42,674 bases of DNA from contig NW_021835130.1 of the NCBI RefSeq assembly GCF_006345805.1, positions 1 through 42,674 of the forward strand. Reading direction: 5' to 3'. Within the stretch, counting starts at the first letter, position 1; each line of letters opens with the position of its first letter. The DNA is from Octopus sinensis. Taxonomy: Eukaryota. The position numbers were made by a program, and so were the translations under genes. Positions 24,795 through 37,195 of this stretch are shown here, piece by piece. A model generated the notes under the pieces. That model was not told the DNA's origin. It made no database searches and worked only from the letters and a program-made list of their open reading frames with translations.

Positions 24795-25078
24795 GAATGA
24801 CCATGGGATCATACCTAGAAAGTTCCCATCTAAAGTACAAGTTGGGACATGGTTGTTTTATAGAAGACCAGCAATTATCCATGCATTCCAGTCTCTCCTT
24901 TCCAGGCAAAGGCCGATACAGCTTGGCACCAGTGACGTTGCAACTCTTTTCACAGCTGAGTGAACTGGAGCAAAATGAAATAAAGTGTCTTGCTCAAGAA
25001 CACAACATACAACCCGGTCCAAGAATCGAACTCATAGCCTCACGACGCTCTCGCCACTGAGCCATGCACCTTCACGAT
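24795..25078 (-). mobile_element. CORE-like tRNA SINE family G
   Basis: Reverse complement A box TGGCTCAGTGG, B box GAGTTCGATTC, TTGAGCAAGACACTT...CTCCAGTTCACTCAGCTG resembling the CORE domain. Confidence 0.75.
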
Positions 25079-28250: not shown

Positions 28251-28695
28251 AGCTGCCACTGTCCTGGGTGGTTGAGAAGGGGGAAAAGGATAATCGATTT
28301 TGTTTTGTTTTGTTTTGTTATTTTTGGTTTGTAGCTTATATTTGGCATTAGCACAAATCCAAATATTTCAGGGATGGACACTGTCTATCACAGTGAATAC
28401 TGGTATTTTGGGTTAGTTAGAGAATGAAGACCAGCAATAATGGCTCAAATCCATGGGTTGTATGACTGGAAAAAAAAAACGGGAGGATAGCAACCCCAAA
28501 CTGGAGACCTGACTTCCGTGTTTACACTAGATTCGCCTTCATTAAACTGATTCATTGGCCAGATCGAAGATAAACCGCGCGATGAATGAAGACTATCACC
28601 ACAGAATTTGTTGTCCGGAGAAGAAAGGAGAAAACAAAATTAATTCTATTATTTCTTTTTGTTTTTGATTCTTTTTACAAATAGATATTTATCAC

Positions 28696-28807
28696 TTACA
28701 TTATTTACATTGTTTTACATTTGACGGATATTTGTCCTCATCTTTGTTGTTAACACAACGTTTCGGCTGATACACTCTCTAGCCTTCATCAGGTGTCTTG
28801 GGGAAAT
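28696..28807 (-). mobile_element. Inverted, 5'-truncated copy of the HHR-bearing tail of the adjacent element
   Basis: Reverse complement aligns to about 29077-29195 at roughly 88-90% identity by eye. Confidence 0.9.
28752..28797 (-). ncRNA. Predicted minimal hammerhead
   Basis: GACAC-CTGATGA-A-GGCT...AGCC-GAAA-CG-T-T-GTGTT. Confidence 0.65.
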
Positions 28808-28898
28808 GGGCATATGGCATATGGCGTAGTGGTTAAGAGTGCGGGCTACTAACCCCAAGATTCCGAGCTTGATTCCAGGCAGTGACCTGAATTATGAC

Positions 28899-28963
<65 letters not shown>

Positions 28964-29215
28964 TAACAATAACAATAACAACAACAACAACAACAACAAC
29001 AATAACAACAACAATAATGATAATAATAGTAATAACAAATCGAAAAATACCTTAGGAATAAGAACCCAGGTTCGAAATTTCCCCCAAGACACCTGATGAA
29101 GGCTGGAGGCTATATCAACCGAAACGTTGTGTTAACAACAAATAAGATAAGGACAAATATCCGTCAATTGTAAATAATGTAAATATTGTAAATAATGTAT
29201 ATAATTTCTCATCTC
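28808..29215 (+). mobile_element. tRNA-headed SINE-like element with internal (AAT/AAC)n and a hammerhead-bearing tail
   Basis: A box TGGCGTAGTGG 28822-28832, degenerate B box GAGCTTGATTCC 28865-28876, microsatellite 28898-29037, HHR 29088-29133, 3' TGTAAATAA repeats. Confidence 0.8.
29088..29133 (+). ncRNA. Predicted minimal hammerhead
   Basis: Stem I GACAC/GTGTT, CTGATGA 29093-29099, extra A, stem II GGCTG/CAACC (one mismatch), GAAA 29121-29124, palindromic CG stem III, GTT triplet. Confidence 0.65.
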
Positions 29216-29466
29216 ATACAACTATTTATTACTTGTTAAGGTTATCTCTACAGATATTCTATAGAAAATATAATCAACACTCATTTCTGTTACGATGTTT
29301 CGCATCTATTTTGTATCCGTTTCGCATTTATTAGTTTCAGAGTTGCATTTGTCGGTATCGTGACTGTATTTGAGACCGTGTGCTGAAACTGAGGTAATTA
29401 CATCATAGAAGAGGCATTTCCGTGATTTAATTTTAATAAAATAAAAATAAACATAAAAACAAAGAA

Positions 29467-32417: not shown

Positions 32418-32839
32418 AGGGAGCGTACTACTCACTCCTAGCTACTAGCAGTATCAACATACCAATGGTTTCTGGGTAATTTCCCGTCCTTGATGCTGGA
32501 AAACCGCCGGCTAGAGATAGCAGCTTACACGACCCTATATACATGTATACATATATGCATATATATACATATACATATATACATATATATAAAGTAAATC
32601 CAAACATGAAAATACCTATATGTTTCTAAATGATTTCGTATATGCAGTTGTTATATTGAGATAAGTATATGTGTATCTATGTATTTGTGCGTTTTTGCAT
32701 GCTTATTTGTATGTATGTATATATAGATATATGTGTGTGTGTGCGTGCGTGCGTATGTGTATATGTGTGTGCATACACACACACATACACACACACACAT
32801 ACACACACACACACATATATATATAAGAAAATATATATA

Positions 32840-33217
32840 GGGTAGAAAAATTAGAGAAATTTTTTACCAGTAGCTAGCATGCATAAAAGAGTCAATAGAC
32901 AACATATTTTTCATATAAAATTAGTGTACAAATATATATCATTTGTAGCGCCTGTGCTGATGAGAACACGGATGGCAAATTATTTTATTTGTTCATTGAT
33001 GTTCGAAACCTAGGTACATGTGGTAACTATTAAAAATGTTTTATTTTTCATCCCCTTCGAAATTACTCTTAACCGTGGTTTAGGCTTTGACTGCTCTTTT
33101 CAGCATGTAAGATGGCCTTTTAGGCTCACTAATTCTATATGAAAAATATGTTGTCTATTGACTGACTCTTTTATGCATTCTAGCCACTGGTAGAAAATTT
33201 CTCAAATTTTTCTACCC
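32840..33217. mobile_element. Fold-back/MITE-like element with ~90-bp inverted arms
   Basis: Arms 32840-32926 and 33127-33217 (about 5 mismatches and a 4-nt indel), in (TA)n flanks. Confidence 0.85.
32953..33020 (+). ncRNA. Predicted minimal type-I hammerhead with canonical core
   Basis: Stem I TGTG/CATG, CTGATGA 32957-32963, stem II GAACA/TGTTC with extended hairpin, GAAA 33005-33008, palindromic stem III CCTAGG, GTA triplet. Confidence 0.75.
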
Positions 33218-33376
33218 AATATATATATTTTCTTATTATAATTTCGTAATTTTGAAGAATGCTGGCACATTTTATTTGCTGATGACTATAACTGCACTTG
33301 CGCGGTGAATTTGAAAAATTATAATGTACATAGTTGGAACATGTGCTGCCGTCAATGTACCATAAACATATATTGA

Positions 33377-33565
33377 TTGTAGCGCCCGTGCCAATGATAA
33401 CACGGGTGGCAAATTATTTTGTTTGTTCACTGACGTTCCGAAACCTATGTACATGTGATAACTATTGAAAATGTTTTTATTTTTCATCCACTTCGAAATT
33501 ACTCTTAAACGTGGTTTGGGCTTTGACTGCTCTTTTTACCATGTAAGGTGGCTCTTTAGGCTCAC
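33377..33565 (+). repeat. Diverged direct copy of the fold-back interior with decayed HHR
   Basis: Aligns to 32943-33129 (offset 434 bp); core reads CCAATGA...GAAA CCTATG TA CATG at 33387-33455. Confidence 0.85.
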
Positions 33566-33675
33566 CTCTTTTGTGTATAAATGTACACTAATATTATATA
33601 TATATATATATATATAGGAGGGGTAGTTTCTGGTAAGTATGTATATATGTATGTATGCCTGAATAATTGTCCGTA

Positions 33676-34956
33676 CGAGGGACGTTCAATAAGTAATGCC
33701 TCTGACCCACTTGCAGTTGATTGATCTAGCTGAAATTTTGCATGTGCAATTGTTTATATCTCTATAGAGTAAGTGGAAAATTACAGCTCTAAATTAATTG
33801 TGGTTTCTGATTTACAGGTGTTTGAACCGAGTCAAGGGTGAAATGGAGCCTGTTGAGTGTCGAGCAGTGATCCGGTTTTTGTATTTGAAAGGACGCACAC
33901 CACGGGAGACTTTTGATGAAATGAACGTAACTTACGGTGATGATGCCCCATCATATGACCTTGTAAAACGCTGGCATCGTGAATTCAAACATGGTCGGAA
34001 CTCTGGTCGCTCCCTTCTGCCATTGATGAGGCATCTGTCCGTCAAGTTGAGGTTGCCATTTTGGAAGATCGACGCATAACTATTCGCCAAATAGCCCATG
34101 AGGTCAAGATTAGTACCGGGTCTGTGGAAACTATCATTCATGACCATTTGCATATGCAAAGGTGTCTGCCAGATGGATTCCCAGGTTGCTCACGCCTTTC
34201 CAGAAGCAAGAACGCGTCGAGTGCTCGAGGTGATTTAGAGATGTGCCAAGAAGATGAGTCAAAATTTTTTCAAAAGACTGATTACACAGGATGAAACCTG
34301 GGTCCATCACGATGATCCAGAGACCAAAGCCCAGTCAATGCAGTTGAAGCACTGTGACTCACCCCCTCCAAAGAAGGCAAGGGTGCAGCCCTCCGCTGGC
34401 AAGGTCATGCTCACAGTCTTCTGGGACCAGGACGGAGTAGTGAGTAGTGATGACAGCTTTCCTTGCCAAGGGGTACCACAATTGCAGGAGCAGAGCCTAT
34501 TATGCTTCACTTTTGAGGAAATTAAGGAGAAGCTATCAAAATAAAGAGACGGGGCAAGATCAGCAAAGGCATCCTCCTCCTGCAGGACAACGCTCCGGTC
34601 CCACAACTCGCTTGTCCCAGATCCGAGTACAGGCGTATGGCTATGAACTCCTCCCCATCCCCCCTACTTTCCTGACCTTCCACCCTCTGATTTTCACCTC
34701 CTCCCAATCATGAAGTTGTTTTTGAAAGGAAAGCGTTTCCCAGATGATGTAGCCTTGATTTCTGAAGTCACGTTCAGGCTGGAGGACCAAGCTGGGTTCT
34801 TCTACAAAAACGGTCTCCAGAGCCGCATCAAACAATAGGAGAAATATGTAACTCTGGGTGGTTCCTATGTAGAAAAAGACTAATAACTGTGCCAAGTTTC
34901 GTTGCTCTACTGCTATGGGAAGTGGGTCAGGGGCATTACTTATTGAACGCCCCTCG
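33676..34956 (+). mobile_element. Full-length decayed mariner transposon (1281 bp)
   Basis: 37-bp TIRs CGAGGG(A/G)CGTTCAATAAGTAATGCC(T/C)CTGACCCACTT; TA flanks 33674-33675 and 34957-34958. Confidence 0.95.
33843..34883 (+). pseudogene. Mariner transposase, frameshifted
   Basis: MEPVECRAVIRFL..., ITQDETWVHH, KVMLTVFWD, LLQDNAPVH, PPSDFHL motifs across several frames. Confidence 0.92.
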
Positions 34957-35425
34957 TATGTATGTATATATAAGTAACCATATATATTGGCGTTTTATTG
35001 TTCTGTGAGTGTATGTATGCATTATGATTTTGTGTGTGCAAATGTGTCTCCGTGTGGTCTGTTTGTAATTAAATGGTCATAAGTGTATGCCGTGGTGTGA
35101 ATGCAGTTGTGATTTTTTTAGTATATTTTTGTTTCTGAGCATGTGCTTCTACGTAGGTGTATGTACACTTTTGGTTTTACTTCAATTCATTGAACCAGAA
35201 GTTATTTGGAATTGTTGTTAGAAAACATGACTAAAATTTCAGGTCTATAAGCTTTTATGTGTGGTCTTGTAACCTTTTAACCCCATTTTATGTTTACTCT
35301 TTTTGAATATTATTTCTTGGTGTCATCTTTATACCTCCTGCTGTTTGGTCCCTATTTAATTCATTTATATTAATATTTTATCTAAAAGTTTTTTTTCATC
35401 ATGATGCTGACATAAGTTCCTTGTC

Positions 35426-35496
35426 TTTCCTGATGAGAATGCACCCCTTATTCCTTCGAAATTAGGAATATGCAGTCTTCGAAACATATGTCGAGA
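35426..35496 (+). ncRNA. Predicted minimal type-I hammerhead with canonical core
   Basis: Stem I TTTC/GAGA, CTGATGA 35430-35436, stem II GAA..TGCA/TGCA-GTC-TTC plus TATTCCT/AGGAATA, GAAA 35481-35484, palindromic CATATG, GTC triplet 35490-35492; AATAAA follows. Confidence 0.75.
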
Positions 35497-35862
35497 ATAA
35501 AGGAATTTTGTTGTAAATCGTCGTTCGACTCCATTCTTCATTTATTTATATTTATATATATATATATATAATGATATATATATATTATACACATACAATA
35601 CATACATACATACATACATACACACACACGCGCATATATATATATACATATATACATGCATACATATATAGATAGATACATAGGTAGATAGATAGATAGG
35701 TGATTGGTAGATATAGTTTGTGTGTGTGTGTGTGTGTGTGTGCGTGTCTGTCTGTCTGCGTGTGAATCATTTTTTATTTTAAGTTTAAGTTCTTTACATT
35801 TTATCCCCTCCTGTTCTTGTTAATATTGAGGATAACAACCTTTCTTTATTTTTACTGACCAA

Positions 35863-36425: not shown

Positions 36426-36519
36426 TATCGTTGTTATTGTTGCTGTTTTTGCAACTATGATTATTATTATTATAATTATTATTATTAATATTATTATTAT
36501 TATTAATATTATTATTATT

Positions 36520-36631
36520 CAGTGAGAGAGCAGTGCATGCCATCAATGTGAAACTGGGGTAAAATATACGAAGCCCAGTATACCCATCATGACTACCCGT
36601 CTGATAAGGGTACACTAGGCACATGCAGCAC
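36520..36631 (-). mobile_element. Element D, isolated 3'-terminal ~110 bp
   Basis: Matches 36658-36770; bounded by (ATT)n. Confidence 0.85.
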
Positions 36632-36657
36632 ATTATTATTATTATTATTATTATTAT

Positions 36658-37195
36658 TGAGTGAGAGAGCAGCTCATGCCATCAAAGTGACACTGGGGTA
36701 AATAATACGAAGCCCAATATACCTATCATGACTACCCGTCTGATAAGGGTACACCAGGCACATGCATCACAACCATATGTGCGCGACATGGTGATCTCAT
36801 ATCAAGATAAACAGCACATAACTTGCAGGTGGGGCCCAGTTAGAATTTTCTTCAGGTCGATTAACCCATCCTGCTCAAAAGGTCCCTGAATAAGGGTTGT
36901 TTAAGGATGTTGAATGAAACACCCATGTTTCCAGAGGTGAATCATTCAAACCCCAAAGAATCCCTCTCAGCACATGGCTATGATGCTCCCCCACTACTTC
37001 TGCTCATGATCAGAGATGCACATATCGTCAGCCACTAAGGGACATGCTCAACTGGTTAAAGTCAAACAACACTGACAGCAAATCTGTGGGTATGAGCAGA
37101 ATATTTGCTGTACGCCCATCTTTTATACCAAGACAAAACAATGTATAGATAACACTCTAATCAGTTAAGATCAGAAGCCATGAGAACACTGCCTG
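36658..37195 (-). mobile_element. Element D, long copy
   Basis: Colinear with 6485-7448; bounded by (ATT)n. Confidence 0.85.

What the first reader, a model, noticed from the sequence alone, without database searches (positions are those of the whole stretch)
28696..29215. tRNA-promoter SINE head fused to a hammerhead tail, with a PLE-style inverted tail copy at its 5' end
Seen: Pol III A and B boxes (28822-28876), an (AAT/AAC)n spacer, then a tail with a minimal HHR (29088-29133). An inverted 112-bp copy of the same tail, also with an HHR, abuts the 5' end with no spacer. Established: SINEs borrow the 3' end of their partner retroelement; inverted 5' terminal-repeat copies are a PLE signature; an extra A between A9 and G10.1 is tolerated in a viroid HHR; schistosome Sm-alpha is a precedent for Pol III boxes plus an HHR. 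Inference: a SINE mobilised by a Penelope-like element rather than a LINE, with the ribozyme defining the RNA end. The two tails are only about 88-90% identical, so two independent insertions are possible.
Basis: partly seen in the sequence, partly recalled or inferred. Interest (0 to 1): 0.85.

Follow-up and report, generated by a model that had tools for sequence, protein, structure and literature searches.

The report
tRNA-headed repeat with Penelope-type hammerheads
A roughly 510-bp decayed retroelement copy in an octopus-like genome joins a tRNA-like promoter head to a tail that looks like the end of a Penelope-like retrotransposon (minimal hammerhead ribozyme, inverted partial copy at the 5' end); it may be a SINE that uses Penelope elements instead of LINEs, but one copy cannot prove that.

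Summary
The described sequence is present. Two inverted arms, about 28696-28807 on the minus strand and 29079-29202 on the plus strand, are 88-92% identical. Each carries a minimal type-I hammerhead: CUGAUGA, an extra A, a G10.1-C11.1 helix II, GAA, a palindromic ACGU with no loop 3, U17, and a 5-bp helix I. None appeared in 200 shuffles under the strict descriptor.

These features match published Penelope-like element (PLE) hammerheads. They also match a genuine GIY-YIG PLE fragment I retrieved by chance, locus L005. The 5'-truncated copy in inverted orientation at the 5' end is a documented PLE insertion signature.

The head is weaker evidence:
- The A box is perfect and lies 44 nt from a poor B box.
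- The anticodon-loop spacing is correct.
- ARAGORN and Rfam find no tRNA.

No second copy of head or tail could be found anywhere, so the claim of a head-plus-tail SINE family is untested.

The anatomy contradicts the idea that the ribozyme defines the RNA end, because both arms continue 60-75 nt past the cleavage site.

My best reading is a PLE-mobilised, Pol III-headed non-autonomous element (about 0.4). The main rival is a one-off PLE capture or template jump onto an (AAT)n-tailed SINE RNA (about 0.3).

The parts
28696..28807 (-). Inverted, 5'-truncated copy of the tail. Its 3' end points outward (left). Its truncated 5' end abuts the head.
   Evidence: Inverted repeats I1-I3; alignments
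28752..28797 (-). Minimal type-I hammerhead: GACAC-CUGAUGA-A-GGCU..AGCC-GAA-ACGU-U|GUGUU. Predicted cut between 28757 and 28756.
   Evidence: Strict descriptor hit, 0/200 shuffles; helices I and II appear in the MFE
28808..28821 (+). Junction between the inverted arm and the head: two 7-nt direct repeats GGGCATA/TGGCATA, followed by TGGCGTA. It lies in the interval where a Pol III start is expected upstream of the A box.
   Evidence: Read directly from the sequence. The start-site expectation comes from general knowledge of tRNA genes.
28815..28887 (+). tRNA-like head: A box 28822-28832 (perfect), anticodon-loop-like GGG-CUACUAA-CCC 28843-28855, weak B-like box 28866-28876.
   Evidence: Negative results from ARAGORN, Rfam and folding.
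28899..29035 (+). (AAT)n then (AAC)n microsatellite, 45.7 units. It is pure near the head and degenerate towards the tail.
   Evidence: Tandem Repeats Finder
29036..29078 (+). Tail segment present only in the direct copy. The inverted copy is truncated just 3' of it.
29079..29202 (+). Direct tail arm, homologous to the inverted arm.
29088..29133 (+). Minimal hammerhead, second copy. Helix II has a C x A mismatch but gains a G-C pair one step further out. Predicted cut between 29128 and 29129.
29167..29205 (+). Terminal 9-nt tandem repeats (TGTAAATAA) x4. The left arm has about 3 units.
   Evidence: (D3)
29203..29234 (+). Possible 20-nt 'tail' extension (29203-29222), followed by candidate target-site duplication TATTTATTACTT (29223-29234), which matches TATTTATCACTT at 28686-28697. 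Not significant.
   Evidence: The motif resembles the element's own terminal repeat, so it is inconclusive.

Best explanation
The locus (about 28697-29205) is an old, probably inactive copy of a non-autonomous retroelement inserted by the enzymes of a Penelope-like element (PLE).

Proposed mechanism, all steps inferred:
1. RNA polymerase III starts about 10-15 nt upstream of the A box, close to 28808.
2. It reads through the head, the AAT/AAC repeat and the tail. It meets no TTTT until 29309.
3. The roughly 165-nt tail mimics the terminal (pLTR-type) region of a PLE RNA, with a minimal hammerhead followed by about 70 nt containing the reverse-transcription start.
4. A PLE RT/GIY-YIG protein nicks AT-rich target DNA on both strands and starts reverse transcription internally on the RNA.
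5. On one strand the copy ran to the RNA's 5' end, giving head plus tail. On the other strand it stopped after about 112 nt, giving the inverted 5'-truncated arm.

The hammerhead is a retained PLE module and does not mark the end of the inserted copy. The sequence anatomy is shown directly. Every mechanistic step, and the existence of a multi-copy family, is inferred.
For: - The minimal hammerheads in both arms exceed chance.
- The same architecture occurs on both 99%-identical inverted arms of a genuine 5'-truncated EN+ PLE, L005:3342-4642 (GIY-YIG PF01541, E=6e-4).
- An inverted 5'-truncated copy directly at the 5' end is a PLE hallmark (PMC8557442; PMC3846280).
- PAc cleaves and extends both DNA strands and starts RT internally, 85-92 nt 3' of the hammerhead cut (PMC11167929). 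Here the arms end 60-75 nt 3' of the cut.
- The unit's 5' boundary (28807/28808) lies where a Pol III transcript from this A box should begin.
- There is no TTTT for 494 nt from the head start. Only 9.7% of random starts in the window reach that distance.
- There is no T-run at the microsatellite-tail junction.
- The overall layout of head, spacer and about 210-nt tail is SINE-like.
- The window is octopod DNA. In Octopus vulgaris, PLEs make up 6.8% of the genome and 1279 SINE families are unclassified (PMC13282606).
Against: - Only one head and two tails are available, so head-tail co-occurrence is unproven.
- No copy of head or tail occurs in 61 kb of O. bimaculoides and O. sinensis DNA, nor in any collection searched.
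- The B box is poor and the head is not recognisably a tRNA.
- No PLE reverse transcriptase lies in the window, and no PLE with this tail was found.
- The arms are only 88-92% identical, and their differences avoid the ribozyme core (P about 0.03). This fits two different templates better than decay of two identical copies.
- PLE insertions are known to trap unrelated sequence and simple repeats at their junctions (PMC3846280; L005 filler).
- The target-site duplication is inconclusive.
Confidence: 0.4

Rival explanations
1. One-off PLE chimera or capture. A PLE reverse transcriptase copying the terminal region of a PLE, or short non-autonomous PLE, RNA switched template onto the (AAU)n tail of an ordinary short tRNA-type SINE RNA and copied it to its 5' end. 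The inverted arm formed in the same event. Head and tail would then be neighbours by accident of one insertion and would not form a family.
For: - In Adineta vaga, unrelated sequences are captured between pLTRs, and (AAT)n/(AAC)n-rich segments are taken up by proposed template jumps (PMC3846280).
- The genuine PLE insertion in L005 carries about 100 nt of (AATT)n filler between its inverted arm and the 5' end of the direct copy.
- Another short repeat family in this window ends in (AAT)n (36500-36790, minus strand), so (AAT)n-tailed retroposons exist in this genome.
- The head ends 12 nt before the microsatellite, as it would in a complete short SINE.
Against: - The junction between microsatellite and tail has no T-run. 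A jump onto the true 3' end of a Pol III transcript would leave one.
- The tail has no TTTT in sense orientation. A SINE requires this, whereas under this rival it would be coincidence, with a probability of roughly 0.3.
- Chimeras are expected to be much rarer than copies of a family, although the rate for PLEs is unknown.
Confidence: 0.3
2. Independent nested insertions. Either an ordinary (AAT)n-tailed tRNA-SINE landed between two pre-existing inverted PLE end fragments, or two solo PLE fragments landed on either side of a SINE, one of them in its microsatellite. PLE endonucleases prefer AT-rich, ATT and microsatellite targets.
For: - PLE-derived sequence is dense in octopus genomes (6.8%).
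- Four hammerhead candidates lie within 7 kb of this window.
- PLEs favour AT-rich and microsatellite targets (PMC11167929; PMC8557442).
- The arms differ by 8-12%, with differences clustered in helix II, as expected for two different family members.
Against: - No target-site duplication longer than 4 nt (AAAT) flanks the head-plus-microsatellite segment.
- No other copy of this tail or head occurs in 42.7 kb of window or 61 kb of octopus loci. Two same-family fragments within 500 bp, in the PLE-typical 3'-ends-out orientation, with one ending 7 nt from the SINE's 5' end, would be a coincidence.
Confidence: 0.15
3. A DNA-level foldback or MITE-like element with terminal inverted repeats of about 115 bp that contain hammerhead-like motifs, carrying a SINE insertion or a captured SINE.
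For: - Long terminal inverted repeats bound the unit.
- Another hammerhead-bearing unit in the window (32821-33236) also has 106-nt inverted arms.
Against: - There is no clear target-site duplication of a DNA-transposon type.
- The arms have unequal lengths because one is truncated at its inner end, as in retroelement 5' truncation.
- The arm content and orientation match PLE ends.
Confidence: 0.05
4. The tail comes from an ordinary stringent LINE (L2 or CR1 type, which end in short tandem repeats such as the TGTAAATAA units here), and the hammerhead motifs are fortuitous.
For: - The tail ends in 9-nt tandem repeats, as many L2/CR1-type LINE and SINE tails do (from memory).
- Rfam hammerhead models do not hit.
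Against: - The full minimal hammerhead architecture gave 0 hits in 200 shuffles.
- It is intact in two diverged copies, with the variation confined to helix II.
- Inverted 5' copies are not a LINE feature.
- The LINE remnant in the window (zf-RVT, 10850-11390) shows no similarity to the tail.
Confidence: 0.04

Closest known systems
Penelope-like element terminal repeats (pLTRs) with minimal type-I hammerheads, and the PLE 'inverted 5'-truncated copy' insertion structure (Cervera & de la Pena 2014; Arkhipova et al. 2013; Craig et al. 2021; Frangieh et al. 2024)
   Same: - The hammerhead architecture is the same, including the extra nucleotide before helix II and the loop-less palindromic helix III.
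- Two hammerheads lie on opposite strands about 330 bp apart. Pairs 100-700 bp apart are reported in Schistosoma.
- The 3' ends point outward and the inner copy is truncated.
- The terminus lies tens of nt 3' of the ribozyme.
- The flanks are AT-rich or microsatellite.
   Different: - There is no RT/GIY-YIG ORF and no direct (tandem) pLTR.
- A tRNA-like Pol III head and a microsatellite sit where the PLE body would be.
- No sequence homology to a named PLE could be tested.
Schistosome Sm-alpha / Sj-alpha SINE-like retroposons bearing a hammerhead (Ferbeyre et al. 1998; Laha et al. 2000; cited in PMC8490949)
   Same: A short non-coding interspersed retroposon described as SINE-like and carrying a type-I hammerhead.
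   Different: - Sm-alpha has a canonical hammerhead with a real helix III and loop-loop contacts, and it is active.
- It is often tandemly arranged.
- Its Pol III boxes are recalled from memory only, because the paper was not held.
- No sequence relationship was tested.
Metazoan non-LTR retrozymes, proposed to be non-autonomous derivatives of PLEs (PMC7229834; bioRxiv 10.64898/2026.07.22.740005)
   Same: Non-coding, hammerhead-bearing, and presumed to depend on PLE enzymes.
   Different: Retrozymes are head-to-tail tandem repeats of about 170-400 bp with canonical type-I hammerheads, and they are expressed as circular RNAs. This locus is a single unit with inverted arms, minimal hammerheads and a Pol III-type head.
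PLE-mediated trans-mobilisation or capture of unrelated sequence between pLTRs (Adineta vaga NRPS gene and non-coding inserts, PMC3846280); short non-autonomous Penelope elements in Heliconius (PMC6685494); non-autonomous Chlamys elements such as MRC1 (PMC8557442)
   Same: Foreign or non-coding sequence is flanked by PLE terminal sequences, including an inverted one. The terminal repeats suffice in cis.
   Different: None of those cases is reported to carry a tRNA-type internal promoter, which would give the passenger its own transcription.
Classical tRNA-derived SINEs that share a 3' tail with a partner LINE (for example eel UnaSINE1/UnaL2, from memory)
   Same: Tripartite layout: a tRNA-like head with an A box at +8, a body or spacer, and a borrowed 3' tail ending in short tandem repeats.
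   Different: The borrowed tail looks like a PLE end instead of a LINE 3' UTR. An inverted tail copy lies at the 5' end. There are no clear TSDs.

Membership tests
PLE-type minimal hammerhead ribozyme (min-HHR) | Catalytic boxes CUGANGA and GAAA in type-I order, with a non-G nucleotide at the cleavage site | tested here: met
   Both arms have CUGAUGA ... GAAAC GU U|G with U17.
PLE-type minimal hammerhead ribozyme (min-HHR) | Unpaired nucleotide between A9 and G10.1, plus a G10.1-C11.1 pair | tested here: met
   Both arms have CUGAUGA-A-GGCU...(A/G)GCC-GAA. The hallmark is listed in PMC4209133.
PLE-type minimal hammerhead ribozyme (min-HHR) | No loop 3, with palindromic positions 15.2-16.2, so that helix III forms only in a dimer | tested here: met
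   ACGU directly follows GAA in both arms.
PLE-type minimal hammerhead ribozyme (min-HHR) | Short open helix I (4-5 bp) and helix II of at least 4 bp | tested here: met
   Helix I is GACAC/GUGUU, 5 bp including one G.U. Helix II is 4 contiguous bp plus G.U in the left copy, and 5 of 6 bp with one C x A mismatch in the right copy.
PLE-type minimal hammerhead ribozyme (min-HHR) | Family-level covariation in the helices across many copies | tested here: inconclusive
   Only two copies are available. All 5 differences inside the motif fall in helix II or loop 2 and none in the core (P about 0.03).
PLE-type minimal hammerhead ribozyme (min-HHR) | Self-cleavage, as a dimer or with protein assistance | not testable with these tools
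   This needs an in vitro assay.
PLE-type minimal hammerhead ribozyme (min-HHR) | Match to a curated hammerhead covariance model | tested here: not met
   Rfam gives no Hammerhead hit at E<=10 on either arm. The models require a helix III. A canonical type-I hammerhead elsewhere in the window does hit.
Penelope-like element insertion (non-autonomous) | Inverted 5'-truncated copy immediately adjacent to the 5' end, with 3' ends facing outward | tested here: met
   The feature is defined in PMC8557442 and PMC3846280. The positive control L005 has the same layout.
Penelope-like element insertion (non-autonomous) | Terminal sequence shared with an autonomous PLE encoding RT plus GIY-YIG | not testable with these tools
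   No PLE ORF lies in the window. The source genome is not searchable. All collection scans were empty.
Penelope-like element insertion (non-autonomous) | Short TSD (8-10 bp, sometimes absent) and an optional 30-40-bp 'tail' extension at one end | tested here: inconclusive
   The candidate TATTTAT(C/T)ACTT would leave a 20-nt extension at the right end, but it resembles the element's own terminal repeat.
tRNA-derived SINE | Internal Pol III promoter: an A box and a B box at tRNA-like spacing | tested here: inconclusive
   The A box is perfect. The B-like box sits at the canonical 44-nt spacing but matches only 6 of 9 positions, which is within chance.
tRNA-derived SINE | Head recognisably related to a tRNA | tested here: not met
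   ARAGORN finds nothing down to a 60% threshold, Rfam gives no tRNA hit, and there is no cloverleaf. What remains is the A box, an anticodon-loop-like GGG-CUACUAA-CCC at the right distance, and a resemblance to tRNA-Ser/Arg recalled from memory.
tRNA-derived SINE | No internal Pol III terminator (TTTT) in the transcribed strand | tested here: met
   The first TTTT lies 494 nt from the head start, beyond the element. Only 9.7% of random starts reach that distance.
tRNA-derived SINE | Dispersed multi-copy family in which head and tail occur together | not testable with these tools
   One copy lies in the window. None occurs in 61 kb of Octopus loci. Viral, metagenome and prokaryote collections were empty. 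Protein-space searches were empty or spurious.
Metazoan non-LTR retrozyme | Head-to-tail tandem repeats, each with a canonical type-I hammerhead (helix III plus palindromic loop) | tested here: not met
   The arms are inverted and not tandem, and helix III has no loop.

The most novel reading that the evidence does not exclude
This is a copy of a true SINE family in an octopod: a tRNA-type Pol III head fused to the cis-acting end of a Penelope-like element. It would be amplified by PLE RT/GIY-YIG enzymes instead of a LINE. PLE reverse transcription starts internally on the RNA, which would make Pol III read-through transcripts usable templates. The held literature describes no SINE-PLE partnership of this kind.
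Probability: 0.4. Interest if true: 0.65.

Novelty: new variant of a known kind. Interest (0 to 1): 0.45.

Why it matters
All well-characterised SINEs borrow the 3' end of a LINE. A Pol III-driven SINE that borrows the end of a Penelope-like element would add a third class of autonomous partner.

It could also help classify some of the roughly 1300 'unclassified SINE' families reported in octopus genomes.

It would provide a small natural substrate, about 170 nt of tail, for mapping the RNA features that PLE enzymes recognise. That includes whether the minimal hammerhead has any role in mobilisation.

If the locus is only a chimera, it is one more example of the known tendency of PLEs to trap foreign sequence between inverted ends, and it is ordinary.

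Tried and rejected
- Rfam at gathering and E<=10 thresholds, on the whole window and on small sub-windows. No hammerhead or tRNA hit in the finding.
- ARAGORN at default and relaxed thresholds. The head is never called, while more than 100 random sites are.
- Exact-pattern scans for tail and head in viral contigs, metagenome contigs and genome contigs. All returned zero.
- A search for other copies through ORFs that happen to span the element. The search for homologous proteins found no candidate.
- The exhaustive HMMER search gave one hit (P0003, E=1e-10). It is a tandem-repeat ORF in a 6.5-Mb bacterial chromosome. Each repeat scores only 25-29 bits, so the hit was rejected as spurious.
- Exact look-up of window ORFs to locate the source record. 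Not on record.
- Literature text search for sequence strings. Only primers turned up.
- Supplements of PMC4209133 and PMC13282606. No sequences are held.
- A B-box-like GGTTCGAAATT at 29069-29079 inside the tail. Dismissed, because 70 such matches occur in the window against 44 expected.
- TSD search. Only low-complexity candidates were found.
- Thermodynamic support for the hammerhead fold. The z-scores are not significant, as expected for minimal dimer-dependent hammerheads, so I did not use them as evidence.

Full report
OBSERVATION

The window is animal DNA that is rich in microsatellites and transposons, with GC of 0.27-0.41. It contains remnants of Mos1/mariner and Tc1-like transposons and a LINE zf-RVT remnant. 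It shares 58, 176 and 178 interspersed-repeat alignments, at a median identity of about 80%, with 20-kb samples of Octopus bimaculoides and O. sinensis chromosomes. It therefore comes from an octopod.

At the reported coordinates the sequence reads as follows:
- 28696-28807: an arm that is the reverse complement of 29079-29202. Ungapped identity is 88-89%. The gapped alignment has 9 substitutions and a few indels.
- 28808-28821: two 7-nt repeats, GGGCATA and TGGCATA.
- 28815-28887: a tRNA-like head.
- 28899-29035: (AAT)n(AAC)n.
- 29036-29078: 43 nt found only on the right side.
- 29079-29202: the right arm, which ends in 9-nt TGTAAATAA repeats.

Nothing else in the window resembles the head or the tail.

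THE HAMMERHEADS

In the tail orientation, both arms read GACAC-CUGAUGA-A-GGCU(N12)(A/G)GCC-GAA-ACGU-U|GUGUU. I wrote a descriptor for a minimal type-I hammerhead. It required a helix I of at least 4 bp, an optional bulge, a helix II of at least 4 bp closed by G-C, GAA, A-NN-U with NN self-complementary, and a non-G at position 17.

The strict descriptor found the left copy (28752-28797, minus strand) and nothing in 200 dinucleotide shuffles of the whole window on both strands. A relaxed version allowing one helix II mismatch also found the right copy (29088-29133). It gave 0.03 hits per shuffled window.

Cervera & de la Pena (PMC4209133) list features of PLE minimal hammerheads that were not part of their search descriptor:
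- the G10.1-C11.1 pair;
- palindromic 15.2-16.2 with no loop 3;
- a short helix I.

All four are present here. The same paper reports pairs of such motifs 100-700 bp apart on opposite strands, which is the arrangement seen here.

Rfam's hammerhead models do not score either arm because they require a helix III. They do score a canonical type-I hammerhead elsewhere in the window, so the negative result is a limitation of the models.

The 14 differences between the arms avoid the 26 core, helix I and helix III columns (P about 0.03). Five of the 9 substitutions fall in the 20-nt helix II. Each copy has one broken helix II pair, at different positions.

A POSITIVE CONTROL FOUND BY CHANCE

While sampling DNA through mariner homologues, I ran my descriptor on the fetched loci. 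It hit L005, an ENA metagenome contig from an unidentified eukaryote. Two identical minimal hammerheads, UAUU-CUGAAGA-A-GGCUCG..CGAGUC-GAA-AGCU-C|AAUA, lie on opposite strands. They sit on 449-nt arms that are 99% complementary.

The longer, direct copy encodes the C-terminal GIY-YIG endonuclease motif of a PLE (IYMIPCGDC..YIGQT..R..EH; PF01541, E=6e-4). The hammerhead starts 4 nt after the ORF's stop codon. The element ends 41 nt after the predicted cut. About 100 nt of (AATT)n filler separates the inverted arm from the 5' end of the direct copy. The whole insertion sits in a (TA)n array.

This genuine 5'-truncated PLE shares four features with the finding: the ribozyme architecture, the 3'-ends-out inverted layout, the terminus a few tens of nt after the ribozyme, and the simple-repeat context.

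HOW THE TAIL COMPARES WITH PLE BIOLOGY

- Arkhipova et al. describe inverted pLTRs, TSDs of 8-10 bp or none, an optional 31-bp tail, and unrelated sequences captured between pLTRs. They conclude that the terminal repeats are sufficient in cis (PMC3846280).
- Frangieh et al. show that the anole PLE PAc cleaves and extends both DNA strands at ATT and AT-rich sites. Its reverse transcription starts internally, 85-92 nt downstream of the hammerhead cut. It does not need hammerhead cleavage (PMC11167929).

In the finding, the arms end 60-75 nt downstream of the predicted cuts (29128|29129 and 28757|28756).

THE HEAD

The A box TGGCGTAGTGG (28822-28832) is perfect. The window holds three perfect A boxes against 0.24-0.33 expected, and the other two belong to heads of other SINE families. 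If the A box is placed at tRNA position 8, three things follow:
- GGG-CUACUAA-CCC falls where the anticodon stem-loop belongs.
- A B-like box lies at the canonical 44-nt spacing.
- The expected Pol III start falls at about 28802-28812, which is exactly where the inverted arm ends (28807).

Against this, the B-like box matches only 6 of 9 positions, which is within chance. ARAGORN and Rfam see no tRNA, and there is no cloverleaf. The plus strand has no TTTT from the head start to 29309, a distance that only 9.7% of random starts in the window reach. The head is therefore plausibly a decayed tRNA-type SINE head, but this is not demonstrated.

WHAT COULD NOT BE DONE

The decisive test is whether head and tail recur together and whether an autonomous PLE shares the tail. 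That needs the source genome, which no tool here can search. Several substitutes were tried:
- Exact-pattern scans of the viral, metagenome and prokaryote collections were empty.
- ORF-based searches were empty or spurious.
- 61 kb of Octopus DNA held no copy.

WEIGHING THE READINGS

(a) A true Pol III-headed, PLE-dependent SINE family, about 0.4. It explains the 5' boundary at the expected Pol III start, the T-run-free read-through, the tripartite SINE layout and the inverted arm.

(b) A one-off PLE chimera or capture involving an (AAT)n-tailed SINE RNA, about 0.3. Support comes from documented PLE capture events, the simple-repeat filler in L005, and another (AAT)n-tailed repeat family in this window.

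(c) Independent nested insertions, about 0.15. This is disfavoured because no TSD flanks the head-plus-microsatellite segment and because the positions and orientations would have to coincide.

(d) A foldback or MITE-like DNA element, or a LINE tail with chance hammerhead motifs, together about 0.1.

The non-random distribution of differences between the arms suggests that the two arms may come from two different template molecules or two events. This is compatible with (a), (b) and (c).

NOVELTY

PLE minimal hammerheads, inverted PLE ends, PLE capture of foreign sequence, non-autonomous PLE derivatives and hammerhead-bearing SINE-like elements in schistosomes are all known. A tRNA-type SINE that uses a PLE as its partner is not described in the literature I could search. 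It would be a new variant of a known kind. On present evidence it is a reasonable but unproven reading of a single decayed locus.

Noticed in passing
window 35424-35498 (+): A canonical type-I hammerhead: UUUC-CUGAUGA-GAAUGC..GUCUUC-GAA-A-CAUAUG-U-C|GAGA. Rfam Hammerhead_1 scores it 20.8 bits (E=0.0045 in a 111-nt search), below the gathering score. It lies about 50 nt upstream of a (TA)n array and is unrelated in sequence to the finding.
   Followed up: partly
window 32821-33565 (+): Another hammerhead candidate at 32953-33020 (helix III A-CCUAGG-U), inside a 200-nt unit present twice 434-436 bp apart (32930-33129 and 33364-33565, 84-89% identical). The core of the second copy is mutated to CCAATGA. 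The first copy is framed by its own 106-nt inverted repeat (32821-32926 / 33127-33236). It looks like a retrozyme-like or PLE-derived repeat. Four hammerhead motifs lie within 7 kb of this window, against 0.03 expected per shuffled window and none in the 61 kb of Octopus DNA sampled.
   Followed up: partly
L005:3342-4642 (ENA ERZ26696836, ctg84618): A young 5'-truncated EN+ Penelope-like element. It has 449-nt inverted arms at 99% identity, a minimal hammerhead 4 nt after the ORF stop on each arm, (AATT)n filler at the inverted junction, and an insertion site in (TA)n. The host organism is unknown. The contig shares only an 87.5%-identical mariner with the window.
   Followed up: partly
window 33674-34963 (+): A mariner (Mos1-type) remnant with HTH_48 and Transposase_1 domains. 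It is 87-91% identical at the DNA level to copies in unrelated metagenome and Logan contigs (L004-L007, L011), and 91% identical in protein over 58% of the query to a mantis-shrimp (Oratosquilla oratoria) protein. It is only 65% identical in protein to the Octopus mariner-like proteins found. This pattern suggests horizontal transfer.
   Followed up: partly
window 14488-14498 (+) and 25054-25064 (-): Two further perfect Pol III A boxes, belonging to heads of other tRNA-type SINE families. The one at 25078-24980 (-) also has a good B box, AGTTCGATTCT. Neither is followed by a hammerhead.
   Followed up: partly
window 16588-19300: A 473-bp satellite, 4.7 copies at 96% identity. It continues in inverted orientation after about 18850. 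ORFs read the same peptides on opposite strands. Each unit gives a weak tRNA-Val-like ARAGORN call at a relaxed threshold.
   Followed up: no
window 36500-36790 (-): A repeat unit of about 115 nt ending in ...CTCTCTCACTG(AAT)n, present twice in tandem. It shows that short (AAT)n-tailed repeats exist in this genome, which bears on the chimera rival.
   Followed up: no
window 10850-11390 (-): The 3' end of a LINE with a zf-RVT zinc knuckle (PF13966, E=4e-7), frameshifted and interrupted by an (AGAT)n array. Homologues at 73-75% DNA identity occur on two short ENA metagenome contigs (L001, L002).
   Followed up: partly
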